This document shows positions 12,401 through 31,600 of a stretch of 32,485 nt of DNA, piece by piece. The translations under genes were made by a program, and so were the position numbers. The stretch is from Lenisia limosa. Its lineage: Eukaryota; Protista; Breviatea. The stretch spans positions 1 to 32,485 of the forward strand of contig LPNZ01002774.1 of assembly GCA_001655205.1 (NCBI GenBank), written 5' to 3'. Below the pieces are notes generated by a model that did no database searches, had not been told where the DNA came from, and was given only the letters and a program-made list of their open reading frames with translations. Each line of letters opens with the position of its first letter. The stretch's first letter is position 1.

Positions 12401-15400
12401 GTCTGTACTGGGCCTCTCGCTTGAAGCTCCACGAAGACAGTAACAATAAGGTCGCATGCCTGGCGTCACCGATGGTCGAAATTTGCCAGTACGCTCCACT
12501 ACCTTCATACCCATCTATCAAACACAACTTTATAATGTAGTTCAAATATTTTGATAGTTTGTTAGTAATAGTATGTATGATATGATATGATATGGCATTC
12601 CACACCGACCTATCTAACACTTAGCCCCTCAACTTGCGACGCATCTAAGTGCGTAGCCGTTCAGCCCGCTACNNNNNNNNNNNNNNNNNNNNNNNNNNNN
12701 NNNNNNNNNNNNNNNNNNNNNCCGTGTCCGAAGGTCATGCATTTACCGTGTGCTGTAGAGGATGGTGGGGGCAGGGGCAGTTCTCTCTCTCTCATATTCT
12801 CCAGTTTTTTTTTATTAGCATATTGGTAGAATTCTCTCGTGTTGGCATTGATTCCACTGACGTGTTAGGATGGCAGTTCTTCAGTCCGCGCCACGCTGTT
12901 TGTCCTGAGCACGTCTACTCTGTAAACGTCTGTGGCTCTTTTTGTTGTCGCATTTCTTTCTCGCAATACGTGCATACTTCATAGAATGGACCATTATCTT
13001 CATCGTTTATGTTTCCTGTTTATTGCAGATATCCTATCAGTTTATTCTTTTAACACCAGCAGCATTTGAGACGAAGGGTTGATCCAGCCTGTTCCATAAG
13101 AGGACTTGTTGTTGTCGCCGCCATAACGGAAGAGGCTGCAAGGAGCTATGCTCGGTATGAACTTACCACCCGTTTGTTAGCATCTTTTCATTTGGGGTAT
13201 TCCCATTGCATGAGCAACTTATCACATAATGAGATATATGTACATACGTAAATGTATTTCTATTCTCATATTGCGTACCACATCCGTTGTTATCGAACCA
13301 GCCTGATCTCGCGAATGGCGCACAACTCAATAGGGCGCTATCGTGACTCACTGTTCACTGTCTATGATGCCATTCCAGGCACCAGAGTATCAAATTTGGT
13401 GAGAGTGATGGGCATGGGTTCCTTTTGATTCTGGAACCTTTCGTGCGACTTTCCAGTTCCTGTTCGTGATTAATATCGTAACTTCTGCAGGTGCTGCAGT
13501 CTTCAGACGCGTCACATGCCTTCAGCGAAGAGAACGGTGTCCCCGAAGCGCTGGTCAGAAACAAGCTGTACGAGGCAGAAGCCAAACTCTCCACTTTCGG
13601 TAGGGGGGTAATAGTTGGTAAGGAGAAGACTGTACTATTGTTCGTTCAGCACCCCTCTTTCCTGATGCCATTAACTGGAAAAGGTCTCCGGTCTCCCAAC
13701 GGCGTTACAATCTTATCTCCCGGTCGCATTGTCTCAGGCCCTCACGCCAAACGATGGAACTACAGGAATACCATCAATACACTTGGTAGGACGTAGCTTT
13801 GGTTCAATGGGTATAATGTTCATTTTATTGTGATGGGATGCGGTGCTGCAGAAGCGNNNNNNNNNNNNNNNNNNNNNNNNNNNNNNNNNNNNNNNNNNNN
13901 NNNNNNNNNNNNNNNNNNNNNNNNNNNNNNNNNNNNNNNNNNNNNNNNNNNNNNNNNNNNNNNNNNNNNNNNNNNTGTAAATGGTCCTTTTCGCCAGTTA
14001 AAAGGTCTACTCGCGCACTCTTTGTCATTCAGGTGTATTGGGCTGTCCATCATGAATCCTCGGGTGATACACTTATGTTCTTTTCCTGTTACGCTCATTC
14101 CTGTTTAACTTCTTTAGTGTATTTCGAAGTCCAACGCTGCTCTCCCTGACTTTTGCGTTATTTCCAAATGCTCCCCTGAGACACCCGATACCTCAGGGTA
14201 AGCTGTGTTTATTGGCAACAGTTTGTGCATTATTTCTTTCCGAACGAGTGTGAATATGTCTTTTGATATTACCACCCTCTGGATGTATGAAGTGTTTTGG
14301 ATGAGTGGTCAGCTGATAGAAAACAGTAGTAGTCCGTTAATGTAATATTTGCCTCTCTCTTTTAGTTTGTTCTGTAGTTCACGGATTTCACCCCCACAGT
14401 TCCGGAGTGATCACGGCGGCGTCAACGGTGACGTCATCATGGGGCCATGTTCAGACATACAAGGGCGCCGACGCCACCAAGGACGAAAGGACACTCAGCA
14501 GTGGGGGGGGGGGTCATCGCCGTTACTTTTGATTCGTCGTGCGTTCTATTGCTTTTTTCCCTTGGTAACACAACAGGCATTGCACAAGAGCGTTACGATT
14601 TCTTCCACGCCAATACGCCCTGGTCTGGCCCCTGGCTCGAGAGAGCAGCAAGAATGATCGACAGTCGAACTGGTCTGCTGCATTTCCGTGTATTTGTCAT
14701 ATTATCGTAGCGGCTTTTAAGGTTTTCTTTACGTTTGATGTCAGGGTGTCTCTTTTCAATCCTCACAGTTTAGAAATCATCACTCGGCCTGTTGTGTCAC
14801 ACAATCGAAGCGAACTCTGCATCAGAGACCTCAACAAACTCTATTTGGAGCTCAACAACATCGACATTGACAAGATAGGACAGGAACCACGCGAGGTTGC
14901 TGAAGAGCAGGCAAAGGACTCAGATGAGTGTCCAATTGAACCTCCCACTGGAGAAGATGAGTGTTCTCAAGTTGACAAAACAGAAGAAGGCCAGACAAAC
15001 AAACCCCCACGCCCTTCCACGCCTACCACAAATAGCAGTAGTGACGATGACGCGTTCTATACTCCCGACCCGCCGGACAACTCCCCAGTCTTCGTGACAC
15101 CCAGCAGCCAGTCACCGTTAACACCAAAGCCGGCACTGGACGACATTGCCAAGCTCAACATCTCCTCCACGCCCTCATCTCCGCCGTGCCAGCTGTTGCC
15201 AGTGAGCCCTGAGCCGCAGCTCACGTGTGATACTCGAGACCCTCTAACACCTTTGAAGCAACACGATGTTTCCTCATCCCCTCCTGAAGACAGCCCCGCC
15301 ATCACTGTAGAGGAGAACGTAGACCCTGCGCAGGCTGAAAATGACGAGCCGATTGCCCTTGATGGAGAGAATGACGAGCCAGTTGCCCTTGATGGAGAGA

Positions 15401-18225
15401 ATGACGAGCCAGTTGCCCTTGATGGAGAGAATGACGAGGCGACTGTAGTTGATGGAGAGAAGGGTTCCAAGCCAAATGAACAGGTGGATCCGCTACTCGA
15501 TATTACAAATTTGCTTCTGAAGAACCCGGAGGTTGGGGGAGGGTGTTATCCAAACGAACATTGGTAAAACCTGTATACACAGAGTTGTAATGCAAATGAT
15601 CCATTAATATAAGACAATAATGCAATATTTCTTATAAGCATGATGGTGTGGAAGGCTTTGACCAGTTACAGCTTTTTTTTTTTTTTCGCATCTCTTTATG
15701 ATTGATATATACACTGTCAAATATGACACGTGGGTGTGGTCAATTTAGCGCCTCATTGTGTTTTAGAGTCTAAAATCTGAGTAGCAGCCAATAATGTACT
15801 TTCAATATCATATTTATACACATTCACCCAACGGCCAGGTTCACACCCCTCACATTATTAGTGGAACGGCCAGGTTCACACCCCTCACATTATTAGTGGA
15901 ACGGCCAGGTGTCCCACGATTACGCAGTGGACGAAATGTTGAAAGCAGGCCCATGGTATCGAATTTCGGTGCTGCATTTCGAAGACGACGAGAACCCTGT
16001 TGTCTACCAGGTATGGCAATACAATCCCAAAAACGATATTATCTGTCTTTATTTTTGACCAAAACGAATCACCGATTTGTGTAGATGTTGTTTCTGCCGC
16101 AAGTTATAAAGTGAACATAGAACAATGCAGATAGTTGACAGTTTCAGGGGACTTCGCTCACCACCATTTGGAACAACATCCTCCAAGACGTAGCGGAAAT
16201 CAACAACAGTCCACCGCCGTCCCCCCAGGTGCGGAGGCTATAATGCAAGGATTCTTCAAAATAATGGACTGTAGTCATTTTTTTTACCTGTTTAGACTGA
16301 GGTGCAAGTGCGGAACTGGCTTGGCCTTGGAGGGGTATGAGCGGATTGTGATGCTCGATGTGAACTTATAGTATTCATTCTAGTATATATTTTTTAGAAC
16401 TTATTGTGTGATGAGATATTCTACCTTGTTAGCGGCTAACGCGACCAGGAAATGCATCGAGCCTTAGAACACTTCGATGGGGCCGATAGCTTGACTCCAC
16501 ACTACACGCCCAAGTTTGCTGTTGCACCAAAACCGTCTACTGACTCCATTGGTATGGGGATTATCAGAGCAATACTCAATTATCTCTGTTTTTGTTTCAC
16601 ACCATTCTGATATTACATCATAGCAGCCACATCATCTGTAGCCTTATTTCCGTCTATGCGAAGGCTTTTTTTTTTGAGGAAATTCTGTCTAAAAGTAGAT
16701 TTATTCAGAAGGGCCCTTCACCTCCCCCCTCCCCTCCACCAGGCGACTTCAAGGTGGATATGGACCCTCCAATCCCGCCCAAGGACCAGTGCTCACGGAC
16801 AGCACCGTATAAGAAGCGAGACGCGTCAGAGAAGGCACGGTTCCACCCCGTTTGTTTCGGTGGGATCCTGTTCCTCTGACATCTGTTGATCCTTCAGATA
16901 TGAAGTAAAATTAATTTCATAATTTGTGATTCGAGATTGCTCTCAGCACCCAAAATGTTTACGATTACAGGCTCCACACAGAACCCTCACGCTTGGAAGT
17001 TTGAGAACCGTGAAGTGCTGCACGAGTACTTGAAAGTTGCTGAGAAGGTGGCGCCGACGCACAGCTCTGTAAGCACCGGGTCAAAATGGGCAGGACAAGG
17101 CAAATTCAAGGTTTTGCTTTTTTGAAGCGTTGCGTTTTGAAACTGTCGAAAAGAGACATGATTACGTTTCGTTCCCCTCTTTGTAACCAAACTGCAGCAG
17201 TTGGAGTCGACGTTTGAGGGCAGGTACCAGACTTTTGTGAAGCATCGCGCGGCACTCCTTCCGAGAATACAGTCTAGACGCTCTCCGATCCATGCCTGGG
17301 GAGTGCTGACATTGGCGCCTCTTGTCAAGGGTGAAATCGTAGGGGGTCGTTTGGGTTGATGGAGGACCGGGAGTTGCTTGGTTTTGATTGAACCTCAAGA
17401 TCATCGAGTATGTTGGTGAAGTAATCAACAACAAGACATGCGAAGATCGCGAGTGTATCTACCATGAAACTGGCCAGGACTGTTATATGTTCCGTGTGTC
17501 CGACGACCAAGTCATTGACGCTACCAAAATGGTGAGGGAGCTGACTAACAACTTTCCTCTTCGACTTCTTCGCATCCCAGAGTAGCTTCATGTCTTATGA
17601 TATGCATCTTTTTTAGATGAGGTTTCTTTGCTTTGCTATGAAATAGACTTCCATGATATCGATATTTATAATGATTTCATCATTTTGGATCTCCTGAAAA
17701 CCCTATTTGTATAAAATTATTATCGTATGTTAAGTCTTTAATTGGGTTCAAGAGGAGAATGTGACATTCTGTAGGGAAATATGGCGCGGTTCCTCAACCA
17801 TAGTTGCAGCCCAAACTGTCAGACAGTTGACATCTGCGTCAATGGTGTCAATCGCATCCTCATCACAGCCAATCGTGACATCAAAGCGGTGGGCTAGAAT
17901 AGAGGGCACATGTGCAGTAATGATAACTAATGGCTTGAGGCTTAGCTTGGGCTTTACTTAAATATTGGTATTTATCGAGGATTTTTCGAGGATTTATCGA
18001 GAAATTCTTTGGGAACGTAAGGAAGCCAGAGGCTTTGTGTTCTGTCTGGTTGCTGGAACGTTTGGTTAATAGTGTGCTAATAAGGTCTTTGAGCGTTGGT
18101 TCAAACAACTTATGATCACTTTGCAGTACGAGGAACTGTGTTACGACTACCACTTCACGGAACACACCTTCGAAGAGCGAATGCGCTGTCTCTGTGGAGC
18201 TTCAAATTGTCGCGGGTTCATCTAG
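9483..18225 (+). CDS. trx: Multi-exon Trithorax/KMT2A-B (MLL1/2)-like histone H3K4 methyltransferase
   Basis: ATG at 9483 (MSDVDADVPTPRSS). PHD1-3 include CALC...LMCCECSLVFHITC, LMCDCCDRAYHRGC and MIQCEKCDKWVHIECDG...LYDVLSDFP...YFCPSC. ePHD, FYRN, FYRC and a WIN motif follow. SET exons 17198..17338, 17400..17531, 17775..17888 and 18127..18225 join in frame: RSPIHAWG...IIEYVGEVI...CYMFRV...[21 protein letters not shown]...EELCYDY...CLCGASNCRGFI, TAG. Exact orthology is not established. Confidence 0.92.
10021..11323 (+). other. PHD finger cluster (PHD1-PHD2-PHD3) of the KMT2-like gene
   Basis: Three C4HC3 fingers spread over about six exons. The third closely follows the MLL1 PHD3 pattern (CPVCRRLYNE...MIQCEKCDKWVHIECDGI...LYDVLS). 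Confidence 0.88.
10248..10292. repeat. Intronic direct repeat (agcc-T6/7-ggaacgcata x2)
   Basis: Read directly. Confidence 0.9.
12187..12357. other. Assembly gap (N run)
   Basis: N bases. Confidence 1.
12358..12920 (+). other. Extended PHD (ePHD/PHD4), interrupted by assembly gaps
   Basis: QVHPSCLYWASRL, KVMHLPCAVEDG and GWQFFSPRHAVCPEH match the H-x-x-C-x-x-W, HxxC and CxxH pattern of the MLL ePHD. Confidence 0.75.
12673..12721. other. Assembly gap (N run)
   Basis: N bases. Confidence 1.
13690..14200 (+). other. FYRN-like domain
   Basis: GVTILSPGRIV...NTINTLG and a downstream CISK...PDFCVIS resemble FYRN (GSLxIHSLGxIV...YPVGY...CxI...PxFxV). Confidence 0.6.
13857..13975. other. Assembly gap (N run)
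   Basis: N bases. Confidence 1.
15337..15456 (+). repeat. Coding 30-bp tandem repeat x4 (ENDEPIALDG, ENDEPVALDG x2, ENDEATVVDG) in an acidic, Pro/Ser-rich low-complexity exon
   Basis: Read directly in DNA and in ORF 14746..15567. Confidence 0.95.
15830..15910 (+). repeat. 35-bp tandem repeat (2 full units plus a partial) spanning a 3' splice site
   Basis: aacggccaggttcacacccctcacattattagtgg x2, then aacggccaggt. CAG|GT falls at AG 15837-38, 15872-73 and 15907-08. Confidence 0.95.
15909..16551 (+). other. FYRC-like domain
   Basis: Exons join in phase as WYRISVLHFEDDENPVVYQ-GTSLTTIWNNILQDV...-VRNWLGLGG-EMHRALEHFDGADSL, matching the FYRC pattern S..xW.xIL...xLG...VxxLIExLxGA. Confidence 0.65.
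16790..16810 (+). other. WDR5-interaction (WIN) motif, CSRTAPY
   Basis: PPIPPKDQCSRTAPYKKR aligns with MLL1 PPLNPHGSARAEVHLRK, just upstream of SET. Confidence 0.75.
17260..18225 (+). other. SET and post-SET domain
   Basis: RFLNHSC, ELCYDY and CxCx4C are intact, and exon lengths (132, 114, 99 nt) preserve the frame. Confidence 0.95.
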
Positions 18226-18335
18226 GTTGCTGGAATATTTGGAATTGATGTGGGTTCGTTGTTTTTGAGTGGGCAAAGGGGGCGCATTTCTGATAAACTC
18301 CTTGTATTATTGCTGACACTTTAGGTATTTCAAGT

Positions 18336-20427
18336 TTAGTTTATTGTATTCTTATGGTGTATATTATTGAATTTAAATTGTATCCTATTATGTGGTTCAT
18401 CTGTAGAGGGTCAGAAATGCCTCTCCAGTTACCTGAACAATTTTTTGGAATTGTGGAATTGACAGGCGGGCAACTTATTAGCAATTTCCTTAACCAACAC
18501 AAGAAAGATCAGCTGTGACGGTGAACATCATTATTAAGGTCAGATCATGAACAAGCCAATTTACAATAATTAGAATAAACTTCACTTCACCACTGCTGCA
18601 TCGTTTTTGGGTAAGTGAGAATTGCGGTTGTTAACACAGTCTCGAAAGCGGATCTGCTATTCCTCTTTTCCGTAAATGTTTTCTGTGTTTGTGTTGTGAC
18701 AGACATTTCCAAATAAGGAAATATGCTCTGAAAAGAGGCCCAAGATTGTAGGAAGGATTCTGAGCGGATACCACTGCAATTTTAGTTTTAGCCCTGTTGT
18801 TAATAGCATACATTCATTCACCTTTTCGTTGGTGTTTGTTAGGAATTTAGGAAGGAACAGTTTGAAAGAAATTGACCTACCATGAAATGCCCAATATTAG
18901 CAGACAAACTGAACGAATCTTTATCAAAAGACTTGAAAGAAAACTGCGATATGAGTGTACAATTTTGAATGGTTTCTTAACTATTCAGGTATATTTTTCC
19001 ATTCGCGCACTCGCTTGAGACCACATCATATAACCATTCCTTCAACTTCACTGAGTTTGGTATGTTTTCCGGGTAACATCCTATGAATATGTTAGTCTTC
19101 TGTAACCGTTTAGACTCCGTAAACCATCGGGCAATTGCCAATAAACTCCAGCGAAGGGAGTTTTCTGTGTCAGACAACCTAGTACTGTTGATCTAAAAAT
19201 GGTGTTTATTATATATGGCTCTATTGCTTAAGTATTGAAGTGAACAAATTACACTGTACATAATTTACATTGATCTTCACGAACCATGACAAACTAACAA
19301 CAGACAGCGCTTCTGAACGTCTCCTCAACCCTGGGCATTCTGAGTGTCTCGTTAATGAGAGTCTCATTGTTAATCCCTAGAATTGTTAGATTTATCATGA
19401 CAACATGGAGAGCTTCTTGATATTCCGATACAACAACATACAAATTGATAGATAACAACTTACCAAATTCCATGAAAGGGTTGTTTTGGTAACAGGCGTG
19501 TTGTAGTGATTTGGAGAATGGCATAATAATAAATCTGAGGGATTTAGATTTTACTCTAAGAGTAGACAGGCAAAATGGCATCTTTCAAATTACTTGCTCA
19601 TTGTCAGGTTATTTTATCTGCAATACAAACAATAAAAAAATAGAGTACAATGTATAAATATAAATACCTTGTCTCCATACCTAAGTTTAAGAGAAATATG
19701 TTTCAAAAACCATGATTTGGACTCATCCCTCTGGGCTTCCTGCCAATATGGCTGCATTTCCTCTTGTTCCAGCTCGATCCATTTGAAGGTTTGGAGAGCT
19801 GGCATGAACAGGTAGCTGTTGAAGATCGTAAAATAATTGGTTACCTACCTTTGTGAGGCCATTTTAACCAGTAGCTGAGCTCTGACAATAGGGTCATCTT
19901 GGGGTATTAGCAAAAAAATATTAGCATCAAAATAGTTTGCAAATTTTCAATAGAAAACAACGCGTTTGTGTTGAAAATACTCATACCGGTTGTTGGTAAG
20001 AGCGAGGTGTATCTGAAGTGTTTTTGGATATCAGAAGCCAAAAATAATTTGAACACTAATTCACGAAAATCTTTCCTAGAACATAAGTTTGCACGGCGGT
20101 AATGTGGCAAACAAACTTATTGACTTTGTCAGTGAGAAAGTTCATATCAATGTGGTTCAGTAATTTGAACATTTGACTGCAGCTGTACATGGTTAGCACC
20201 TAAAGTAATAAACAGGCATAAGGCGTTTTGATACGTTATTATGATGATAAGCAGGCACATGACATCTTGATACATTATGATGATTGTAAAATTAATTTTT
20301 TATAACATTTAAGAAATACTTACCGTGACGCCAAAGTACTCTTGATCAAGGGGATGGTTTCTTGCATAGAGCTCTTCTGCTGGGAGTCTGAAATGTTGGA
20401 GTTGATGGTACAATTCTTGATAATCAT
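18336..20427 (-). other. Degenerate protein-kinase-like (TK-like) domain, probably catalytically inactive
   Basis: Motif relics appear in kinase order: FRLPAEELYARNHPLDQEYFGVT; KDFRELV...KHFRYTSLL; LRFIIMPFSKSLQ; SLLAIARWF...IFIGCYPENI...VKLKEW; FMWYPLRIL...LFSEHISLFG; FETVLT...TYP; IPKNCSDE; PHNRIQF. There is no HRD or DFG. Confidence 0.55.
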
Positions 20428-23400
20428 CTATCATATATTACTTGCATTGGATGACAGCCCGTAAATGTAGATCCCCAGCTTACCCGAAATGACCAACTTC
20501 CAATGCTGTTAATGCAACAAGAATTGCCAGAATCTCGACGTCAGTGTAGAATCTGAAAGTTCAATACACCAAACATAATGTCTAGAATAGTGAAAGCAGT
20601 TTTAAGAAAGACTAAAAGGATCGAATACGAGAATTACAATGTACATTTCATTATCATCAAACCCTGGTAGAACCTTGCTCGCGGGTATTGTCTCTACTTA
20701 TCAAAAGACTTACTTGGGACTCTCAGAAAAGACAAGGCCGAAGCCAAAGCTGAGAACCTTAGCTGTTAATAATTACGAAATCATGACACAAAACATGTTC
20801 ACTTATGTCACTGCAAGGGTCGTACCTGTGCAGCCCTTGTTGCACAATGGAACTTATTATTTTGGTAACTCGCCTCGATGTTCAATACCCAGGACCTAAA
20901 TATTTGAAATTAACTTGTAAATTGTTTGAGGTTTACCACTTATTCTCACTCTGAACAAAATCCCTGGTTTCGCTACCCCAGGCGGCGAAACCGGTGGTTT
21001 AGAAACTTTATTCTCAACTTCCCTCCTACAACAATTTTTGTTGGTCAACAAGAGAGGACAAGTTCCAGTATGATTGGTGCATGATTTGAGCGAAAGTATG
21101 TGTTAGTACATAGTCTTGAATCATCAGCAAACACAATAAGGGGCCAACCAGGGTCAATAGAATGGATGATAAAAGGGTCGAAGTCAAAGCTCAAACATTT
21201 AGCAGTATGCTTTTGGATATCTAGCGAAGACCTTCAATGTTTAGGGCAAGATACAGTTTACATACACACATACATATTCCATAACATTTATGAATTTCCC
21301 TAACGTACATGTTGCGAAAGTCATTTGCAGAATTGGATGAGTTAATTCTACTAGGTAACAGGGATGTTTTATAAGTTTTAGTTATGTGCCGAAAACAATC
21401 ATTGTTAGAAGAAAAAGTTTCACCGCGTACAAAGCTACTGTGGGTTTGAGCACAAACTGTAACTCGCCTTTTTTATTCCAGTCCATAAACCACCATTCTA
21501 CTGGTGAGTCTTTCAGTGGAACTGGGGATTTCTAGTTCATTAGCATTTGAGTCATAAAATCGATATATATATAATATATAGTATATAATATATAATATAT
21601 AGTATATATACATATGATATGATAGTACATACAGTATACCCCCTGATATGAACTAAAAAACCATAACTAACGGTGGAGCCAAGAATAACAGGTTTGCTCT
21701 CTGCTACATAGTCCATTGCATGTGAACTTCCTGAGTAATTACTCAAATGGCTCCTTATATTTGCTTCATACCGTCGTCTTCATTCAGTTGGAGAAGGTCA
21801 ACTCTCGGCAGCCCTAAAATATCAATAAAGTGCTTATACGTACAGATAAAATTTTTAATGTAAGAATCAAAGGTTAACATGTGATCAACATAGACACTGA
21901 GACACATTATTTCCAATCACTGTGAAGAACGCTCATGATGACTCCACAGTGTCGAAGATTACGTTTCTGAGTTGGTTTGCCCAAACGAAGATCCTACAGT
22001 GCAAGAGTATAGTTAAAGAGAGCAAAATAACAGCGTTCTCTATGTCTTCACACAATTTACCTACTAACCTTTAACAGTGACGTTAGCTGGTTTTTACATA
22101 ATTGTAAATGTGTTTCAGGGGAGCTTGTGAAATCAGCCTTGAAGAGTTAGTTGCAATGTTTCTAGGTACAGAACCTTCATAAATGCCATTGACTGTCTTG
22201 TCTTGCTGCCTCGGAGATATATGTGTAACAACACAAAGCCTTAAAGGTGAGTTTGCGAATATCCTACCAATCAGAAAGAGGAATATCATAATTGAAATGC
22301 TTGCTATGAGCATCGAGATGCTGTTCTATTGTGTGAGCGCTGGAATCTGTCGCACAAATACGGAGATATTGTCTTTGTATTCAACTTACATCTTCTTGTT
22401 CTCCAACGGCTGGAATATTGAAGGTAAAGTTTCCGCTGGCTTAATGGTTAGATAGGATGATGGATCCGAGACATCAAATATTACATCCAAAAATATTTTT
22501 ACTTCAATGCCAACCTAAAAGTATGTCTTTGTTGTAGACGAGGATATTGACAAAACAGGTTCCGTCACCAACTACGTCATATCCTTATGGGTAAGCTTGT
22601 TTGTTCAAAGTCTGAGATTTCTAGCTGAGTTATCTACGATATCACATTTCATCGTACCAGAGAGAGACATCGAGCTTCGGGCTCCTTCAAAATGGAGAAC
22701 TTCATCTTTTGGAAATATATAACGTATTTTTGTAGGTGATAAAACCATCTTTCTACTGTAGCCTTTACGAAAGCTAATTCTGTTGTTGTAAAACGAAGTA
22801 AAAAGAATTGAAAAAGTAAAACGCGATGCAATTGTGATTTTGTATTTAGATGGGTAGTGCCGACAAACTAAATGACTCACTTAATGGTTGTGGAATTGCT
22901 GTTATAGTTGACCAAGTCACAAACTTCCACATTGACTTGAAAAGGATTTCTTGTTGCAATGTTAACTATTGTCTTTTGATGAAGAATCAAGTCTAAATTC
23001 CTGAATTTGTGAAAAAGAAAAAACTATCAGCTTTCTGCTTTCCTCTAGTATGCGATTATTTATCAGTAAAATCTATCACTAAAACTATTTGAGTCTCAAA
23101 ATGGTATCATCACTTTAAAAGATGATACTTTTTCCATTCTATTCCGAAAAAACCAAATCATGAATAGTGTATATCCAACCTTCCCAGGTGACTGTCGTTC
23201 TCATAAACTGTTGAAACCACTACAAAGTAAAACGCCAGTTTACAATGCATGCCTATTGTCCCACAAACAAGTGCCTGTTGAATATAAGTTCAGATTAAAG
23301 TGATGTATCGCAACCTTTGAAACGGACCATCTTAAAAGTTAAATTTTAATTGTTGCCTCTGGGCGCCTACATATTCATCCGAATGAGATTGAGTTCTTCA

Positions 23401-25490
23401 TCACTTAAACACGTTTTGTTTGGAAGCACTGTATATGGAGAACAGAAGGGATCAACATTACCACTAAAAAACTCTTCGAATTCGTTATATAACTAAATAT
23501 TAGAAAACACATGCAGCTTCTTACTTCAAATGTCTGGACAGGTAAATTTTCAAGTTTCATTTGGAAATCATTTTGGGTAATTTGGGAGAAGTTTGAGGTT
23601 CGAATTGCAGATAACTACATTTTGGTTCGGTTAAATGTCCATTGATTCGTGAAAAAGTGTAACATTTGTCGTAATGTAACGCCTACCATTGAAGTTATGA
23701 TGGATTTTGTTTGATAAACCTACATTGTAAATCCTCACCCTCAATACACACGTCAATGATCATAATATCATTGTAATTGCTGTCCGCCAACTGTGGATGT
23801 CAACAGTCCATCCCCCAGAATGGACCGGTGCGGGCCAATGTCCGATATACACGGCATATACACGTCAATTGCAGCTAAAGTAGTTATTGTTAAACGTGAA
23901 AATACATATTATACATGTATACCGTGACTCTTACCTCTACAAGCAGAGGTTCCCAACGTAAACGACATAATCACGTCAACCCCCTAAACAATTACAAAAT
24001 ACAACACCACCTTACATATCGTTGACGAAGTAGCAAAGGGCTAATTGAACTGTATATCGAGTCGTAAAACCCAATCCACTCGACAAACACCTTACACTCT
24101 GGACATTTGTATTGTACTCCTATAACGGTAAACTAATGATAGTTTTCAACCTAATGAAAACGCCTGCAGTTGGAGATGCCCGGTCTCAAAGCCGTATACA
24201 ACACCAATCTGATACTTTAAGAAACAATTCATTTTCATTATCCATTTGATATCCCTTACCCGTTTTGACATGCTATTTAGTCCAGCGATAACACCCTTCA
24301 TGAATGGAAAGTGATAACTGGAACAATTAGCGTAATAATTCATGAATGTAATACGTTATTGGTGAAGTCCCGGTATATTTTCCAAAACAATTCCTCCAAC
24401 TCTTCACTTCTGAGGATTTTCAGATTCATTGGAAATATCATGTTTTCTGAAGATCTGAATTCTAGTTAAAACATTTGTGATAACTAACTTAACAAATGGT
24501 ATTTTTTCATTATATGTAAATATCAATGTACATGAATATGTATAAGAACCACGGTGATATAGCACGATAACTATTCATTTTACTCTTTTAACTATGATTA
24601 AGACTTTAATTCTCCGTATTATGTTAAATATTGTCAGGAGATGCATACGCACTGGAATCTCTCTTCAATTGAAACCTACACTAACAAGAAGTGATCATTT
24701 GGAAATTCGCAGGCAAATTTTGCAACCTTTTCTGAAGTATAATAATATCGACATGTACACTCTCCACATTTCGCAATGCCATACTTTGATTAAAGCCTGT
24801 GTTTGGATGTACAATGAACAGGTCAGTCTCATTGGACTCTTTCCTAACAATCTAACAAGTAAAAAACAACTCTCAAGAAATATCTCAAGCGTGTGACTTG
24901 ATCAGCGATATTTGATAAGATCATGACTTTTCAGCCTACATCAGCAATCTGGCCTAATTTGTCTATTGCTAGGTTAACACTCTGGACAATTAAAAACAGT
25001 ACCACCACAGTTCTTCAGCTTACCACAATGTGGTTTTCAGAATCTTCAAAGGATTCCATAACGTTTAAAATGTCTTCCTAACAGAATGAGGACAAATACC
25101 CTCCTTGTTTTTTTGGTTTGAAGTCTCTATTCAAGCCCTACTTACAAATGCTCCATTTGTAAACGAAAGACGCGTCTAGATGGTTAATGTATCAATGAAT
25201 TCAATTTGAGTATCCACCACCTACCGATCCTGCAATGAAAGAGACACTGAATGATTAAAATCTCCATATAAAAAGCAAGTTAATTCTTCCTGGTACCCAA
25301 CAAACCGCATCGCTTTACGATGTTTTGTCCACTGTGCTTCATTTTGCAAGATCACTTCATTGCATTCCGTGATAAATTGAAGATATTCTAAAATGTCAAA
25401 ACTGACAGTCCATTGTTCTAGGAGCAAGTAAAGTGTGAAACAACCTGGGTTATCGTCAAAATTTTCGTTAATATCGGGATTTGCTGACAT
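18336..25490 (-). CDS. Multi-exon gene, putative receptor-like pseudokinase: BMP/PrnA-like substrate-binding domain, unknown beta-rich region, TM-like segment and degenerate tyrosine-kinase-like domain
   Basis: Many minus-strand GT-AG exons join in phase (e.g. 24260..24317, 24151..24208, 24016..24119, 23935..23983, 20324..20427). ATG at 25490 (MSANPDINENF); a further upstream exon at 25779..25806 is possible. Stop TAA is inferred at 18336-38. A few junctions are unresolved, so the single-gene model is an inference. Confidence 0.6.
20228..20284. repeat. Intronic imperfect direct repeat (ttgatac...ttatgatgat x2)
   Basis: Read directly. Confidence 0.75.
21563..21622. repeat. TA-rich microsatellite-like tract in an intron of gene 3
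   Basis: atatatatataatatatagtatataatatataatatatagtatatata. Confidence 0.85.
23290..25290 (-). other. BMP/PrnA-family (basic membrane lipoprotein, type 1 periplasmic-binding fold) domain
   Basis: Spliced peptide: LSFTNGAFEDIL; DLFIVHPNTGF...KVAKFACEFPNDHFLL; FMKGVIAGLNSMSKRIGVVYGFE...AFSLGVQYKCPECKVFVEWIG; GVDVIM; LLTST; FSGNVDPFCSP; LSDEEL...MNIWSVSKV. These follow the order of remembered BMP motifs (SFNQSAYEGL; GYDLII..GF; KVAKEFP; YLAGVxAG..TK.NKIGFVGG; AFALGAxxVNPxxKVxVxWTG; GADVI; VLTS; I.SG..DPFTGP; L.D.EL..M.WFVEGV). Confidence 0.75.
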
Positions 25491-25980
25491 TGTTGCTCTG
25501 AGATCTGGGTATTTCTCTTTTCAGCTTCTGGTTTTGAAAAGCAACAAAAAGTGTTTCCTAAACTCCATCAAATTTTTAAATCTGCAATCTTTCACACGCT
25601 TTAGCGTTTTGTGATGTGGGGTAACAAATTGTTATTAACCATTAGAGACCATTAACGTAGAAGCATAAGGCGTATGATTGGCTATACCAAGGAATTTTCC
25701 GAAAGAACTTCCTTATCAGGTAAGTCAATCATGACAGATATCATCATTTGTTTATTTTGGGTGAGTGATCTTATTCACCCATTCCGAGAAAAATTATAGC
25801 AAACATCAAAAGAGCAAAAGAACGTAATTCTACTCAAGCTCTGTTGCTCAGACTAAGCACAGCATGAAGAATGACGGACATCTCTGACTCATCCAATAAT
25901 TCCGAGCTTCCGAGCCACCATATTCTAAATACTTTTCATTTGTCATCGCTTCTCTGATAGTTCTTAGAATCCATATCACA

Positions 25981-28517
25981 ATGTCTAGAGATGCTAATGA
26001 TGAAAAAGCTGCATGGGACCTCCTAGCCCGTTTGGATGAAATGTTCTCAACTATTGGGAAGCAGAACACCAGGTTTGATTCAGATATGCTCTGAATTATG
26101 TTTTTTACCTTATGATATCCAGCACAGAAGAACTTTTTTTTCATTTTCACGGATTTCATCCTTGAACGATTTAGAAAGGAGCTGTCACAGGAAGCGAAGG
26201 CCGCCAGGGCTGCAATAGTCTCTGATGTTGTCGAGGCTATTTCAAATCACAAAGGTTCGGGTATTGCGGTCACTCTTGTTGATCTTGCTGCTTTTGTAAA
26301 ACCCCTTCTCCACTGAATGGAACTTTGTTCTTCAATGCTCTTTTGTGTACTAATTAAAAACATACTATTGTTTGGTAATCAGCAGTTATTACGCTACACT
26401 CCTTCACGGGGGCAATTTTTTTTTCCCACTTGTCACCCATCCACACATTTATCAGCCGTTTAGAGTTCAAAGAGAGCACCTCCCTTCTCTTCGCCAAGTG
26501 TCTCCAGGTCTTCACTGCCCTGTTTGAAGGCCACAATGGTGGCACTCTTGTTGGTTTGGGTTTGGTGAAATGCTTTACATATTTCAAGAGTGACGGAATT
26601 ATTTACCTTTATTTGAGATTGCTAGTGTTTGATTTGTTGCAGTAGTGGTTCTTTCTTCACATCCAAGTAGTGACCTCCTATTTGGTCACACGTTTTGTTG
26701 AGTTCTTTACGCCTAGCTGTTGGTATTTTGACCTGATAATATGATGAAATCTATTTTACCAAAATCCATCCTCGTGACCCCCCCTCCCCAGGTCCCTGTT
26801 ATTATGTCGATGTCTTTAGTTTCGGTCTTCCAGGCCCAGACAGACGCCTCAGTGCTGACTGCATGTGCTCAATTGGTGGCTGGGCTGTCTGTGTTCTCCT
26901 TTATTACATCTGGAGCCAAGAGCCAGATACTTACAAAGGTAACATGCATAGGTTTCGGCAGTGTGTCGTTTGGCTGAAATAAAGCCTGATCTTCTTGAAA
27001 TGGTATGTTGGTTACTGCAAGCGTAACAATTTTAATACCATAAAATACCTTAACCCTCGCCATTTTGTTTGAGTATATCTTTCAAAGATGTTTTATTTGA
27101 GAGAACAAATCAAAAGCAATTCATGTTCTCATCACATAGGAAGGAGTCAGAGCCACTTTACTGAAGGTCCTCTCAAGCCAAGATGAGACCCCCCTCTTAG
27201 TAGCCGACAGTATTGCAAGGGTATTGAAATCTGTCCCATCTGATGCGGCCGCGCAGCTTGGTTGCTGGGGTTATTAAAGCTACAATCTAGTTTTACAACT
27301 TTTGATGACTGTCCATTTTGTTTTCAGTCATAATCGACCCCCCCCCCTGAACAGTTTCCTCAATCCAAACGGCTGATATTCCAAGTACAAATACAGTGTG
27401 TCTTTGTGACGCCATTTTGGAGCTTTGTGAAAAGACCAACGAGACTCCTCCACAAGCTGCTGGGTGGGCTATCTTCTGGAATGTGATCGTAGACTGTCAA
27501 TTATCACAACTACACATAACTTCCTATTTACCTCACATCAACAAAGCTACTGTGAATTTATCCAAGTAGACCGCTCTTCAGCGAACTAGATCAAATGATG
27601 ACGTCACCAGATATGCTTCTGAGCTACGTTGCCAAGGCGTCAAGGGCAAAGGTCGGCTACCTGGGTACTCTGGAATGGACAATACTGTTATAATAATTGA
27701 ACAGACAGATTATCGGACTCTGTTTTCAGAAAGAGGATTTTGAAGAACATATGATACCATGTACAATGGTTTATTAAATGAAGTTTCTGATCAAATTGAC
27801 TTTAAATTTATTAACACGTCAGTTTTATCGCCTGAGTTCGTGCCCCGGAAGCAGCCCATTTTTAGCAGAAATTGAAAGCAATCCATCTGCATTAAAATTT
27901 GCTGCAATGGGAGCTTCTAATGTGGGTGTCTCCTCTGTCAAGAAAGTGTTGACCCCCGTATCGTTGTTACAAACATATTCAGATGTACATAGTGTTGTAT
28001 TATACTGTTTTGTCGTGATGCCAATAACTGTTTCGCAGTACCGGCAAATAAGCTAACCTTTTTAGTTGAATGAAGTTTCGGCAATTCTCAAAGCAAGCAG
28101 CAAAGTTCTTAGTCTTCATGGAATGGTAAGATACCAGTATATGTTATTCGTTAATATTCCAAAGAACAATTTCATTATATGATTGGCCAAACTTTATAAC
28201 CCATTCACGCCTTTCAGAAGTTTGTGGTGACAGCACTTGGCGAAATGAAGCTCAACGAAGAATCACTGCAGGCGTTTGCAGATGTTCCCGAATGTTTGCG
28301 TTGTTCTTGTATCATGATCATTGAATTTGTTTCACTATTTTCTTTTTGCTTCGTGCTTAGTGCTTCTGTAAATTGGTTTTAATCCTGTTTAGTTTCCAAA
28401 ATGTACTTTTCGGAGCTATCACAATCCTTGATACAAGATGGTATGAACAGCCTGGCACATGTCCTTGAAATCGGGTAGGATTTCGGGTTCTCTTTAGGAC
28501 TGACTGCTACAGTGTAA
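25981..28517 (+). CDS. Multi-exon gene, alpha-helical ARM/HEAT-like repeat protein of unknown function; one apparent frameshift at a T8 run
   Basis: From 26142 onward the exons join in phase: DFILERFRKELSQEAK; QTDASVLTACAQLVAGLSV...KSQILTK-EGVRATLLKVLSSQDETPLLVADSIARVLKSV; ...FSELSQSLIQD-GLTATV, TAA at 28515-17. The start could be further upstream (ATG 25871). Confidence 0.7.
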
Positions 28518-28688
28518 TATCCTTTAGAACGGGAGAGCCCTCGGCTTCTTGTCAAAGGGGACTCAATTCAATCGCCAACAATATGAACGTAAGGGGTTCT
28601 AAACCCTTGAAAAAGATGGAAGAGTCATTTTTATTTGAAGACTTTTTTGCTGTCAAATTATTCCCAAAATCATTTCCCCTCATGTTAA

Positions 28689-31600
28689 TCAGAAGAACGT
28701 CAACGGTGAGAGGCTTGAAGGTCTGGATGTGATGTGTGCATTGTCAGCCTCACATAGGGAGTCCATTCGCATCCCAGGTTGGTGGCACGCTCTTTCACAG
28801 CTCGGAGAGTGTAGGGTATCATAAATTTTCCAATCCCCCTCCCCCTTAGCAGTTTAGCATACCGCTTACTCGCCGCGTTGGCCCGAAGTCATGACGTCAC
28901 TGAAACCCTGCTCAAAAACGAGCTTTTCATCACCACTCTTCTCAAGAGTTCTGTGGTATCACAAAGTGGTATGCAGCATTATACAGGCTAGTACAGACAC
29001 GTCCATTCCAACCAAAACTGACATCTCAGAAGGGCAGTTCCGCTTTGCTGTTGTGTCGTCGATATTGAGTACCGCTCGAAGAGCTAACCTGACTAGCACC
29101 CCAACTGTGGGTAGCCTACCTTATTCGTATTGTTACGAACATATTAACCACATAGGCCCTAGCTCTCATGAACTGGACGGACTCGTCTACAGCAGCACGG
29201 CCTTCAGAATCTCGCTTATTGGTGGAGGACAGCACCTTCTAGGGCCGTTGTGTATTGATGTGCAGGCTTCAGAAGAAGAAGACATCCGTTGGTGGTACCA
29301 AATTTATCTAATACAGACCCCTCAAAACTCTATCACACTCCTTTCTAGTAATACATATTAACTAGTATTGAGGAATCAAGTGCTACACTTGAGCTTGAAA
29401 GACGATGAAATGTTCTGGTATTCGTCCAAGGCATTGGCCTCGGTGAAGTCGGACGCAAAGATCAGCTCTGCAGCCAGGGCAGGCTGGGATGTCAGAAGAT
29501 TCCTAGCACCGTGGTTGCGTGCCTACCTCCACAGAGGCTCCAGTGTGAGGGGGGTTTGCAAGAACCTGCTCGGAGCTAAAGGCAACATTGTACATTCGCA
29601 ACTACCGCGGTCAGAAATAGAGACACAATCAAAACTCAATTTCTCTTTGGGTAGCCGGTTTAACAAACCATTTCGATTTTGCTTCCAGCATAGAGATAAT
29701 TTCCAGCATAGTCTGCACCAGATATATGGTCACCAACAGAGACAATCTAAATGAATATTAATACTCTTATCATTGATAAAGAAGTACTGTCCTCTTACAC
29801 TAGGAGCAGAGGTCGGGACAAGAGTTGGGCATGTGACTGAGCCTTTCTGTCTGGTTAATTATTTTGGAGAACAAAGTATAGTATACCACAAGTAATTCTA
29901 GCTTTAAAGTGAGAATATATCATCTATTGAGAGGTGCTTTTACTTTTCAAAGATCATTAGGGACTAGTTATACAGAGGCTTCAGCCAAAATAAATACTCT
30001 ACAAATCTTTCTCGTTCATCGCTCATAAGTTGTCCCAAGCAAACATCAACGCCGTTGAGGTAGTACGTGTACGTTCCGCTGGTGGCAACAATAGTCATTT
30101 CAGCCCACTGGTCAACTAAAAGTCAGAGGACACTGCCGATGACGGCAATTGCTTACATGGTAAAGTCGCAGCAATGTTTCCGCAATAATTGCCCCTCTGG
30201 TAAATGTTCAAGTATGTATCGAACTAAATGGTGATGCTCAAATTGAATTCAATGAAGTAAGAGAAAAGTAACAGGCTAATAATATAAACCCACTTTCGGC
30301 TTAATACGAATAATACAAAAGCTAAAACAAATATCTTTTTGCAAAACCAAAAGGTAAAAAATAAGATCTTACGTGTCTGAAAATGCTTTGAAAGGTGGTT
30401 GGGGTTGACACGAGATGAGTTGCCATAAAGTGGAAACCAAGAGTAGTTGAAGGGGCCCATATACGGGCTTGGATTGTGTAGGTCTCTTCTGAGAGTTGTG
30501 AATTGATTTCAAACATCAAAGAAGATGAGTCCAGAAAGAACACTGATTTTACAAATAAGTGTTTGGATAAACCACTGCATAAATAAAAAGACAGGAAAAC
30601 AATCCACTCCCGACGACCTGAAGGCCACATGATCGAATCTATCTTGGCGGCATGTGCTGTCGGTCCAGCAGACTCCAAGGCATACTGCTTGTTCACCTTG
30701 GGGTGTCAAACACAGTACTTCTATTCAATACGTTATCGTTATGGACACGTGTGGATACTGGAAACTAGCGGCTGGAATTCCTCCAAACCTCAACACTTGG
30801 TCGACAGACATGTGAGCCAAGAACTCCAGTGCAAACCTGTCCTGTAAGTTGCTCCAAGTATGTATGCCTAATAGTAAAATTTACTCGAAGACAACAAAAG
30901 TTGTCCACACTGGTATCAGAATGTTTCATGACTGTCTCTCTCACTTTGATCACAACCGAGCCACACACAGAGGGGATAACAATGTCCCCGGGTCCAACTC
31001 GTGCGCTGCCAATTGATGCGAACGAAGCGCCATTGATGGATTGCTACTCGGTTATTAGGGCTTATCATAGAAACAGAATTTCATGATGCATTCTCGAAAG
31101 CTATGTGTATCTTATTTTTTATCGCTCTTTTTTCTGGCCAAAGTGAAGTCCAAAAAATGGATAAAAAGGGTTTTTGTATAATATGATGTGTAATAAAGTT
31201 GATGGTTCCAAATACAAATTACGAATCCCCCCGAAGATTTGAGCCTACTTGAACGAAGACAGTCAAATCACTTGGGATGTCTAAAATATTTTAAAAAAAA
31301 AATACAAAGAGAATCACTTTGACCCAACAAACTGGCAATATGGACGGTGGTAGTGTCAAAAGATGTCGACTGAATGGTGTAAACGTTGTCAAAGATGATG
31401 GGGTGAGTAAACAGTACGTGTTGTCAAAGATGATGGGGTGAGTATATATCATCAAAATATTCTCTATTCGATATGCTGATGAAAACGTCATCCCAAGACA
31501 ACCGTTTTTATTGGGCATTAGTACATATTCACAACAAAGGAAGCAGAGTATGATCCATTTACAGTGGAAAACATACGGCAGTGGCGGAGCAATCGAGAAA

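What the first reader, a model, noticed from the sequence alone, without database searches (positions are those of the whole stretch)
23290..25290. Bacterial BMP/PrnA substrate-binding domain fully intronised in a eukaryote
About a dozen short exons reconstruct BMP-like motifs in the right order across the whole domain, from SFTNGAFEDIL to SGNVDPFCSP...LSDEEL...MNIWSV. Dense spliceosomal introns argue against bacterial contamination and for an old, domesticated acquisition (inference: horizontal transfer). No lipobox is visible, and extra cysteines (CPEC, SAC, PFC, KTC) suggest disulfide-stabilised extracellular use.
Basis: partly seen in the sequence, partly recalled or inferred. Interest (0 to 1): 0.75.

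Follow-up and report, generated by a model that had tools for sequence, protein, structure and literature searches.

The report
Bacterial-type BMP sensor domain, intron-split
A protist gene cut into about fifteen short exons encodes a ligand-binding "flytrap" domain of the bacterial BMP/PnrA type, but this domain type is already known at the front of receptors in Dictyostelium and a lower fungus, so this is a new member of a known kind and not a first.

Summary
On the minus strand of 23.3-25.5 kb lies an intron-dense gene. It has 16 strong donor motifs on the minus strand and 0 on the plus strand, and a phase-consistent chain of about 15 exons.

Its exons resemble the BMP/PnrA family (PF02608) specifically:
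- A profile of 39 Pfam-verified bacterial BMP proteins, aligned to the DNA, scores 34 bits with free GT-AG introns. With my splice graph it scores 47 bits.
- Shuffled profiles, the plus strand and 36 other window segments score about 16-17 bits, at most 21.
- Profiles of three sister binding-protein families stay at noise level.
- Each exon taken alone finds its best place in genomic order (Kendall tau 0.74, p 1.5e-4).
- Two or three other contigs of the genome carry paralogous exons.

Only the core (profile columns 155-272) is significant on its own. Pfam's own model sees nothing in single exons.

The horizontal-transfer reading was not tested. The novelty is overstated: 13 Dictyostelium Grl receptors and two Allomyces receptors carry BMP domains (PMC1885808, PMC3251606).

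The rest of the protein is unresolved. There is one strong membrane helix, no detectable kinase or 7TM family signal, no signal peptide and no RNA evidence.

The scan has flagged similar "BMP sensors" on other DNA of this genome. The joined spliced protein was not searched or folded.

The parts
25297..25490 (-). Candidate first coding exon (ATG at 25490; ...KAMRFVG). The donor GG|GTACCA at 25296 is weak. Start and extent are uncertain, and there is no signal peptide.
   Evidence: Open frame 25520-25224. Phase fits the next exon. No BMP score of its own.
25225..25246 (-). Exon 2 (VSFIAGS), the expected first beta-strand of the N lobe.
   Evidence: Acceptor CATTCAG and strong donor GTAGGT at 25224, phase-consistent.
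25146..25175 (-).
   Evidence: It follows the only AG acceptor between two strong donors. At the expected profile column 56 (DDKSFNQSAW) it scores 4.9 bits, rank 2 of 343.
25024..25077 (-). Exon 4 (EDILNVMESFEDSENHIV).
   Evidence: Strong donor GTAAGC at 25023. Best ungapped placement at column 89.
24940..24981 (-). Exon 5 (SVNLAIDKLGQIAD).
   Evidence: Strong donor GTAGGC at 24939. Best placement at column 102.
24680..24783 (-). Exon 6 (YGIAKCGECTCRYYYTSEKVAKFACEFPNDHFLL), the end of the N lobe.
   Evidence: Strong donor GTAGGT at 24679. It aligns to columns 111-132 (...VAKEFPDVKFEHV) with 15.7-16.5 bits, the best N-part hit and collinear. hhalign P 0.037.
24260..24317 (-). Exon 7 (YHFPFMKGVIAGLNSMSKR). 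BMP-like coding sequence (NYYANCSS) continues upstream to about 24349 with no AG acceptor, so the 5' boundary is unresolved.
   Evidence: Strong donor GTAAGG at 24259. Part of the 47-bit alignment. The upstream extension aligned.
24151..24214 (-). Exon 8 (YQIGVVYGFETGHLQLQAFSL), a strand plus glycine-rich turn of the C lobe.
   Evidence: hhalign P 0.039 at template positions directly after exon 7. Donor GTTGAA is weak.
24016..24119 (-). Exon 9 (VQYKCPECKVFVEWIGFYDSIYSSISPLLLRQRY), the most BMP-typical exon.
   Evidence: Strong donor GTAAGG at 24015. hhalign P 1.7e-4 against the BMP alignment. Paralogous exons on C7997, C8746 and C6315.
23935..23983 (-). Exon 10 (GVDVIMSFTLGTSACR), matching the consensus GADVIFGVAGSTGVGV.
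   Evidence: Strong donor GTAAGA at 23934. 12.4 bits ungapped at column 226..
23792..23874 (-). Exon 11 (AIDVYMPCISDIGPHRSILGDGLLTST), with LLTST matching VLTSA. The 3' end is uncertain (weak GTTGGC donor).
   Evidence: Best placement at column 245. Paralogous exons on C8746 and C6315, downstream of their exon-9 matches.
23687..23719 (-). Exon 13 (VYQTKSIITSM). The link from exon 11 is uncertain. One option is a 9-nt exon 23752-23760 reached through a TG-ending 31-nt intron.
   Evidence: Strong donor GTAGGC at 23686. Best placement at column 261. Not significant alone.
23525..23614 (-). Exon 14 (LSAIRTSNFSQITQNDFQMKLENLPVQTFE).
   Evidence: Strong donor GTAAGA at 23524, phase 0 at both ends. 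Best placement at column 280. Weak.
23371..23492 (-). Exon 15 (LYNEFEEFFSGNVDPFCSPYTVLPNKTCLSDEELNLIRMN), the C-terminal helix region of the domain.
   Evidence: Strong donor GTAGGC at 23370. Best placement at column 279. hhalign places it at template 359-376, not significant.
23319..23330 (-). Start of exon 16 (I-WSVSK). How it continues is uncertain (GTTGCG donor).
22269..22319 (-). Candidate membrane helix (ISMLIASISIMIFLFLI), in frame with strong donor 22267. Probably the same gene, but the link is not shown.
   Evidence: Kyte-Doolittle mean 2.78 over 17 residues, the highest in 17-26.5 kb. Frame and donor.

Best explanation
Window 25.5-23.3 kb, minus strand, holds a genuine spliceosomal gene of a protist. 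Earlier notes of this scan name the breviate Lenisia limosa; I did not verify that.

About 15 short exons (9-40 codons) encode a two-lobed periplasmic-binding-protein domain of the BMP/PnrA type (Pfam PF02608), a 'Venus flytrap'.

Shown:
- The exons and their order.
- The specific BMP likeness of the core (C lobe).
- The absence of likeness to three sister families.
- The existence of paralogous exons elsewhere in the genome.

Inferred:
- The domain is the ligand-binding ectodomain of a membrane receptor. A ligand closing the two lobes would signal through the membrane segment about 1 kb downstream. This is how the BMP-domain Grl receptors of Dictyostelium are thought to work.
- The ligand is unknown. 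The aromatic residue of the SF(N) loop is kept, but the acidic loop residues and the LTS..K lysine of nucleoside-binding PnrA/BmpD are not evident. A purine nucleoside is therefore not the default guess.
- The origin of the domain is ultimately bacterial-type. Since it also occurs in Amoebozoa and a lower fungus, it was probably already present in an early common ancestor and is not a recent transfer.
For: Splice evidence:
- Donor motifs number 16 on the minus strand and 0 on the plus strand.
- The exon chain is phase-consistent.

Family evidence:
- The BMP2 profile was built from proteins that Pfam PF02608 hits at 105-298 bits.
- With the fixed splice graph it scores 47.2 bits against 16.0+-1.6, with the reversed profile at 15.9.
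- With free GT-AG introns it scores 34.1 against 15.9+-1.7, max 21.2.
- The 36 other window segments reach at most 21.1.
- Rival profiles PF13407, PF13458 and PF04392 score 14.9-18.9, which is noise level.
- The alignment covers columns 155-272 across four introns.
- Exon-by-exon placement is collinear, tau 0.74, p 1.5e-4.
- hhalign run per exon gives exon 9 P 1.7e-4 and collinear template positions.

Other:
- Paralogous exons lie in the same order on C8746 and C6315, and one lies on C7997.
- A membrane helix lies at 22319-22269, in frame with a strong donor.
- Cysteines are enriched.
- There is precedent for BMP-domain receptors in eukaryotes (PMC1885808, PMC3251606).
Against: - Pfam's curated PF02608 model finds nothing at exon level, neither in the six-frame scan of the whole assembly nor on ten single pieces.
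- PDB sequence searches of single exons give only noise.
- The N lobe and the C-terminal part are not significant alone.
- My first, narrow profile gave a lower score and no collinearity.
- With low intron penalties the free alignment is not better than shuffles.
- Several junctions are ambiguous: exon 6 to 7, exon 11 to 13 and the 5' end. They could mean non-AG acceptors, an assembly frameshift or a decaying gene.
- There is no RNA evidence.
- No signal peptide was found.
- The link to the downstream membrane helix is not shown.
Confidence: 0.8

Rival explanations
1. It is a Grl-type class C GPCR. The BMP flytrap would be followed by seven membrane helices (7tm_3), as in 13 Dictyostelium Grl receptors.
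For: - This is the known architecture for eukaryotic BMP domains (PMC1885808, PMC3251606).
- The minus strand has six or seven hydrophobic 17-residue stretches between 22319 and 20483, against two on the plus strand.
- Several of them are in frame with strong donors at 22267, 21997, 21029 and 20483.
Against: - The PF00003 six-frame search finds nothing in the whole assembly.
- Pfam and PDB searches of the hydrophobic pieces are blank.
- Only one stretch (22319) is strongly helix-like. The others score 1.9-2.4 and could be buried helices of a soluble domain.
- No class C motifs were recognised by eye.
- Earlier notes describe paralogues as single-pass receptors.
Confidence: 0.2
2. It is a single-pass receptor whose cytoplasmic part is a degenerate kinase-like domain.
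For: - There is one very strong membrane helix.
- One kinase-like local match lies at 21354-21271: LVELTHPILQMTFATCTLGKFINVMEYV against ...LRHPNIVQ...IYIVMEYV.
- Earlier follow-ups report this layout for paralogues (unchecked).
Against: - PF07714 gives 134 exon matches in the assembly but none on this contig.
- Pfam finds nothing on ten pieces of 18344-20437.
- The kinase-profile-to-DNA alignment scores 17.9 bits against a null of 15-16+-1.5 (max 19.1). A real kinase gene of the same assembly scores 114.
- Piecewise placements are not collinear.
Confidence: 0.3
3. The locus is a decaying or untranscribed paralogue (pseudogene) of a BMP-sensor gene family.
For: - Junctions are ambiguous. BMP-like coding sequence at 24349-24318 has no AG acceptor in front, and the exon 11-13 link needs a TG acceptor or loses residues.
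- There is no RNA support.
- GC is the lowest of the window, 35-37%.
- Paralogues exist.
Against: - Frame and phase are kept through at least 11 consecutive junctions that use strong donors.
- There is no in-exon stop in the model.
- Earlier notes report functional non-AG acceptors in this genome (unchecked), which would explain the odd junctions.
Confidence: 0.12
4. The resemblance is chance, or reflects a generic periplasmic-binding-protein or Rossmann-like pattern and not BMP.
For: - There is no Pfam or PDB hit for any single exon.
- The free alignment with cheap introns is no better than shuffles.
- The Atlas look-alike of exon 9 is unrelated.
Against: - The score is 13-26 bits above every control of three kinds: shuffled profile, other strand and other DNA.
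- The sister families score at noise level.
- Independent exon placements are collinear.
- Paralogous exons are conserved.
Confidence: 0.04

Closest known systems
Dictyostelium discoideum Grl receptors (GrlA-D, F-H, J-M and others): signal peptide + Bmp domain + 7TM of GPCR family 3 (PMC1885808). Also BMP (PF02608) in two Allomyces macrogynus Glutamate-family receptors (PMC3251606).
   Same: The gene is eukaryotic and intron-bearing. A BMP-type flytrap sits at the N-terminal side, with a membrane region downstream. The presumed role is an extracellular ligand sensor.
   Different: No 7tm_3 signal could be detected here and no signal peptide was found. The lineage differs (a breviate according to earlier notes). 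The exons are far shorter.
Bacterial BMP/PnrA/Med/BmpA-D substrate-binding lipoproteins of ABC nucleoside transporters (PF02608; PnrA 2FQW/2FQY, BmpD; PMC7093131).
   Same: There is collinear profile similarity, strongest over the C lobe. Matches (this gene / BMP consensus): FMKGVIAG / FLAGAVAA, IGVVYG / IGYVGG, VQYKCPECKVFVEW.GF.DS / AKAVNPDVTVEVVYTGTFED, GVDVI / GADVI, LLTS / VLTS.
   Different: There is no lipobox and no transporter context. About 15 spliceosomal introns interrupt it. It has five times more cysteines. The acidic residues before SFN and the lysine after LTS are not evident, so nucleoside binding is not implied. That last point is an inference from a consensus alignment, not from a structure.
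Animal ANF_receptor-type flytraps (natriuretic peptide receptors, class C GPCR ectodomains) and bacterial LivJ-like Peripla_BP_6.
   Same: They belong to the same superfamily fold (Periplas_BP clan) and show the same logic of a flytrap ahead of a membrane span.
   Different: The sequence does not resemble them. The PF01094 six-frame search finds nothing in the window, and the PF13458 profile scores 14.9-18.9 bits, which is noise level.

Membership tests
Bmp / PnrA-like substrate-binding domain (Pfam PF02608) | Match to the curated Pfam model above its gathering score (24.1 bits) | tested here: inconclusive
Only exon-level tests were allowed. The six-frame scan of the assembly gave 0 candidates, and ten single pieces gave no hit. 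Exons of 9-40 codons cannot reach the threshold alone.
Bmp / PnrA-like substrate-binding domain (Pfam PF02608) | Collinear similarity to a profile of verified family members that is clearly better than to sister families of the same clan | tested here: met
   The BMP2 profile scores 47.2 bits (fixed graph) and 34.1 bits (free introns) against nulls of about 16+-1.7. PF13407, PF13458 and PF04392 profiles score 14.9-18.9. Exon order gives tau 0.74, p 1.5e-4. hhalign per exon agrees.
Bmp / PnrA-like substrate-binding domain (Pfam PF02608) | Family sequence landmarks in order: D-x-SFN loop, FP(D/N)..F..VD, F(L)AG..AA, (V/I)G.VGG, NP..V.V.Y.G.F.D, GADVIF..AG.TG.G, IGVD.DQ, LTS..K | tested here: inconclusive
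   Present in order: SFTN, EFPNDHFLLV, FMKGVIAG, IGVVYG, CPECKVFVEW.GFYDS, GVDVIMSF.LGTS, LLTST. Not evident: the acidic residues before SFN, a clean GVD.DQ motif and the lysine after LTS.
Bmp / PnrA-like substrate-binding domain (Pfam PF02608) | Two-lobe type-I periplasmic-binding-protein fold with a ligand cleft | not testable with these tools
Single exons are too short.
Bacterial BMP lipoprotein of an ABC transporter | Lipoprotein signal peptide (lipobox) and neighbouring ABC transporter genes | tested here: not met
   There is no lipobox in the candidate N-terminus. The gene is spliceosomal and its neighbours are eukaryotic-type genes.
Grl-type class C GPCR (Bmp + 7tm_3) | 7tm_3 (PF00003) seven-helix domain after the flytrap | tested here: inconclusive
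   The PF00003 six-frame search found none in the assembly, and Pfam and PDB searches on the pieces were blank. Six or seven hydrophobic stretches do lie on the minus strand between 22319 and 20483.
Grl-type class C GPCR (Bmp + 7tm_3) | N-terminal signal peptide | tested here: inconclusive
   The candidate start MSANPDINENF... has none. A hydrophobic open frame at 25833-25783 (SFALLMFAIIFLGMG) could be an upstream exon, but no link is shown.
Receptor with kinase-like (pseudokinase) domain | Protein-kinase fold detectable by profile | tested here: not met
   PF07714 has no match on this contig among 134 in the assembly. Pfam found nothing on ten pieces. The profile-to-DNA alignment scores 17.9 bits against a null maximum of 19.1, with a positive control at 114. 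Placements are not collinear.

The most novel reading that the evidence does not exclude
The BMP-type flytrap may be the shared sensor of a lineage-specific receptor family in this protist. The family would have at least three or four genes, seen as paralogous exons on C7997, C8746 and C6315. The sensor would be wired not to a 7TM GPCR body, as in Dictyostelium, but to single-pass receptors with varied cytoplasmic outputs. Earlier notes claim a dead kinase, a histidine kinase and a phosphodiesterase. Some junctions inside the gene may also use non-AG 3' splice sites (CG at about 24354, TG at 23761). That would make one bacterial-type sensor a reusable front end for several eukaryotic signalling outputs.
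Probability: 0.3. Interest if true: 0.6.

Novelty: new member of a known kind. Interest (0 to 1): 0.38.

Why it matters
It extends the known range of BMP-type flytrap receptors from Amoebozoa and a blastocladiomycete fungus to another deep branch near animals and fungi. This supports an early, shared recruitment of this bacterial-type sensor into eukaryotic surface receptors.

It is also a useful practical case. A real domain split into exons of 9-40 codons is invisible to Pfam run exon by exon, yet a profile-to-genome alignment with proper controls recovers it.

If the downstream part proves not to be a 7TM body, the family would show the same sensor feeding different outputs.

Tried and rejected
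1. Pfam PF02608, six-frame over the whole assembly: 0 candidates. Pfam on ten stop-to-stop pieces: only noise at E about 0.1.
2. PDB sequence search of three exon pieces: zinc-finger CPEC noise, a rotavirus polymerase, or nothing.
3. DNA-level and protein-level self-searches with the 2.7-kb stretch, the 99-aa, 41-aa and 69-aa pieces: only self.
4. Word search of the 5.8-billion protein set with the 69-aa piece: no candidate.
6. The look-up of encoding contigs showed that an ENA contig (ERZ3820729 NODE_254) is the same DNA at 100% identity. It only has prokaryote-style ORF calls with no Pfam hits.
7. Free-intron alignment with the first narrow profile: 23.9 against a null maximum of 22.8, not convincing. 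With cheap introns it over-fits and equals shuffles. I therefore built a broader profile and used a 5-bit intron cost or a fixed graph.
8. N lobe alone and C-terminal end alone: not significant.
9. 7tm_3 and ANF_receptor six-frame scans: nothing in the window.
10. Kinase tests: negative.
11. ESM Atlas look-alike of exon 9: CxC-cluster noise, with recognition below threshold.
13. The big representative search was not run. Exons of 46 residues or fewer at about 45% identity (32 bits) cannot reach significance among 1.84 billion proteins, and no claim here rests on the absence of relatives.
14. A codon-usage test was abandoned. Kinase exons of this assembly have GC3 from 0.22 to 0.85, so no single coding model fits.

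Full report
**The observation**

The finding concerns window 23290-25290.
- SFTNGAF ends an exon at a GTAAGT donor, and EDIL... begins the next exon after a TTAG acceptor.
- SGNVDPFCSP and LSDEEL lie in one 40-codon exon.
- MN|I|WSV spans the next intron.

The region has no long open frame and the lowest GC of the window at 35-37%. It has a striking strand bias in splice signals. GTAAG/GTAGG/GTGAG occurs 16 times on the minus strand and not once on the plus strand between 22800 and 25700. The window average is about 2.3 per kb per strand.

I used those strong donors, the AG acceptors and the requirement that frame and phase stay open. This gave a chain of about 15 exons of 9-40 codons, separated by introns of 31-72 nt, plus one of 156 nt and one of about 330-360 nt. 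Eleven consecutive junctions use strong donors and fit in phase.

Four places are ambiguous:
- the 5' end;
- exon 6 to exon 7, where BMP-like coding sequence continues upstream of the only AG acceptor;
- exon 11 to exon 13;
- the continuation after 23319.

**Standard searches see nothing at exon level**

- Pfam PF02608 over the whole 49-Mb assembly in six frames gave no candidate.
- Pfam on ten single pieces gave nothing.
- PDB sequence searches of exon pieces gave noise.
- A word search of the large protein set gave no candidate.

This is expected for exons this short and says little either way.

**Building the test profiles**

I fetched bacterial BMP genes through a degenerate DNA pattern. 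I also fetched them through PF02608 six-frame searches of 17 bacterial genomes, where the places score 105-298 bits, so they are verified family members. From 39 diverse proteins I built a profile, BMP2.

In the same way I built profiles of three sister families of the same clan:
- Peripla_BP_4 (PF13407);
- Peripla_BP_6 / LivJ-like (PF13458);
- ABC_sub_bind (PF04392).

I aligned each profile directly to the genomic DNA with a GeneWise-like dynamic programme. No spliced sequence was ever joined or sent anywhere.

**Results of the profile-to-DNA alignment**

With any GT...AG intron allowed at 5 bits each:

| Test | Score (bits) |
|---|---|
| BMP2 on the minus strand | 34.1 |
| 40 column-shuffled profiles | 15.9+-1.7, max 21.2 |
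| Reversed profile | 14.4 |
| Plus strand | 16.7 |
| 36 other 2.7-kb segments of the window | 17.0+-1.7, max 21.1 |
| Three sister profiles | 14.9-16.3 |

With my fixed splice graph and free introns:

| Profile | Score (bits) |
|---|---|
| BMP2 | 47.2, null 16.0+-1.6 |
| Combined BMP profile | 42.7 |
| Narrow first BMP profile | 31.3 |
| Three sister profiles | 15.1-18.9 |

The alignment runs from 24304 to 23789 through four introns and covers profile columns 155-272 of 352. Landmark matches (this gene / BMP consensus) are:
- FMKGVIAG / FLAGAVAA
- IGVVYGFE / IGYVGGIE
- GVQYKCPECKVFVEWIGFYDS / GAKAVNPDVTVEVVYTGTFED
- GVDVIMSF / GADVIFGV
- LLTSTV / VLTSAV

**Is the whole domain there?**

Alone, the N-terminal part and the C-terminal end are not significant. 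However, the best hit of the N part is the expected one: YYTSEKVAKFACEFPNDHFLLV on columns 111-132, in the exon just before the core.

As a test that needs no joining, I placed each exon separately, ungapped, on the profile. The best columns for exons 1 and 3-15 are 142, 184, 89, 102, 98, 151, 168, 192, 226, 245, 261, 280, 279.
- From exon 4 on they are almost perfectly ordered.
- Kendall tau is 0.74, p 1.5e-4, and 0 of 300 residue shuffles reach it.
- The sister families show no positive order.
- The narrow profile fails this test, which I report as a weakness.

The SFTNGAF exon scores 4.9 bits at its expected place, opposite DDKSFNQSAW. That is rank 2 of 343 offsets.

hhalign run exon by exon against the BMP alignment gives P values of 1.7e-4 for exon 9, 0.037 for exon 6, 0.039 for exon 8, 0.084 for exon 10 and 0.14 for exon 7. 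Template positions are consecutive. Nothing comparable appears for the sister families.

**Paralogues in the same genome**

- Exon 9 has protein-level matches on three other contigs: C7997, E 7.9e-6, 47% identity; C8746, E 3.7e-4; C6315, E 0.025.
- Exon 11 matches C8746 and C6315 again, on the same strand and downstream of the exon-9 matches.

So these exons are conserved coding sequence of a small gene family. Earlier notes of this scan flag several "BMP sensor" receptors elsewhere in this genome. I treat those as leads only, but the paralogous exons fit them.

**Context around the domain**

Downstream on the same strand is one very strong membrane-helix candidate at 22319-22269 (ISMLIASISIMIFLFLI). 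Its hydropathy of 2.78 is the highest in 17-26.5 kb. It is in frame with a strong donor. Five or six weaker hydrophobic stretches follow, down to 20483.

I could not show what the cytoplasmic or membrane body is:
- The 7tm_3 six-frame scan is blank.
- PF07714 has 134 exon matches in the assembly but none on this contig.
- Pfam on twenty further pieces is blank.
- A kinase profile aligned to the DNA gives 17.9 bits against a null maximum of 19.1. A real kinase gene of the same assembly gives 114.
- One local kinase-like match at 21354-21271 remains unexplained.

The candidate N-terminus has no signal peptide or lipobox. A hydrophobic open frame at 25833-25783 might be an upstream exon.

**Comparison with what is known**

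BMP domains in eukaryotic receptors are not new. Prabhu et al. 2007 (PMC1885808) describe 13 of the 17 Dictyostelium Grl receptors as signal peptide + BMP domain + seven-helix domain. Krishnan et al. 2012 (PMC3251606) list PF02608 in 13 Dictyostelium and two Allomyces Glutamate-family receptors.

The bacterial members are nucleoside-binding lipoproteins. In them the base stacks between two phenylalanines, and acidic and asparagine residues of the SFN loop contact it (PMC7093131). Here the phenylalanine of the SF motif is kept, but the acidic residues are not evident. The ligand is therefore open. This is an inference from a consensus alignment.

**Verdict**

- The family assignment to BMP is supported by tests the domain could have failed.
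- The contamination argument is right.
- Horizontal transfer and extracellular use remain untested inferences.
- The claim to novelty shrinks to a new lineage and possibly a new partner domain.

**Limits**

- I left out every step that needs the joined protein: Pfam or HMMER on the spliced product, AlphaFold, fold search and phylogeny.
I sent them to no search tool afterwards and masked them in scripts.
- The organism name comes from earlier notes and was not checked here.

Noticed in passing
window 24349-24318 (minus strand): BMP-like coding sequence (TFMNYYANCSSYHF, matching the consensus ...ASNVASLVF) lies upstream of the only AG acceptor of exon 7. The frame-compatible intron end would be CG at about 24354. 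Alternatively there is a 1-nt frame problem against the open frame 24465-24343. The cause could be a non-AG acceptor, an assembly indel or gene decay.
   Followed up: partly
window 24150, 23791, 23318, 23181, 24727 (minus strand): A second class of donor recurs after AG or A at places where the frame logic needs an intron: GTTG followed by A, G or C (GTTGAA, GTTGGC, GTTGCG, GTTGGA, GTTGCA). It sits beside the GTAAG/GTAGG class.
   Followed up: no
window 24851-24684 (minus strand, other frame than exon 6): A 56-codon open frame overlaps exon 6 and contains ...LFIVHPNTGFNQSMAL..., with an exact FNQS as in the BMP signature loop. It cannot reach the strong donor at 24679 because of a TAG. I take it as chance or as a trace of an alternative exon.
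   Followed up: partly
window 21354-21271 (minus strand): A local match to the protein-kinase N lobe: LVELTHPILQMTFATCTLGKFINVMEYV against LAQLRHPNIVQ...IYIVMEYV. VALYAVK lies about 30 codons upstream. It is not significant overall and no other kinase landmarks follow in order.
   Followed up: partly
window 22319-22269 (minus strand): The strongest membrane-helix candidate of the region (ISMLIASISIMIFLFLI), ending at a strong donor at 22267. Weaker hydrophobic stretches lie at 22034, 21870, 21438, 21175, 20621 and 20533.
   Followed up: partly
window 25833-25783 (minus strand): A short hydrophobic open frame (SFALLMFAIIFLGMG) with an internal ATG and a GTGAAT just after it. It could be a signal-peptide exon upstream of the domain.
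   Followed up: no
G000 contigs C7997:3878-3991, C8746:39810-39893 and 40220-40315, C6315:3557-3667 and 4578-4676 (all plus strand): Paralogous exons of exon 9 and exon 11 at 41-55% protein identity, in the same order. On C7997 and C6315 the exon-9 match lies in open frames of 105-109 codons. Those longer exons might reach Pfam's threshold alone.
   Followed up: partly
whole window / L144: ENA contig ERZ3820729 NODE_254 (33,094 nt, coverage 33) is 100% identical to window 15221-32485 over the 17,265 bases compared (L144 holds only that part). Its gene calls are prokaryote-style open frames with no Pfam hits, so public annotation misses this gene.
   Followed up: yes
G000, 19 kinase exons on other contigs (L004-L022): GC at third codon positions ranges from 0.22 to 0.85 among kinase exons of the assembly. 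The assembly may mix organisms or have very heterogeneous genes. Introns in this gene (31-72 nt) are also longer than the 21-29-nt class that earlier notes describe for this genome.
   Followed up: no
They lie inside the possible downstream part of the gene.
   Followed up: no
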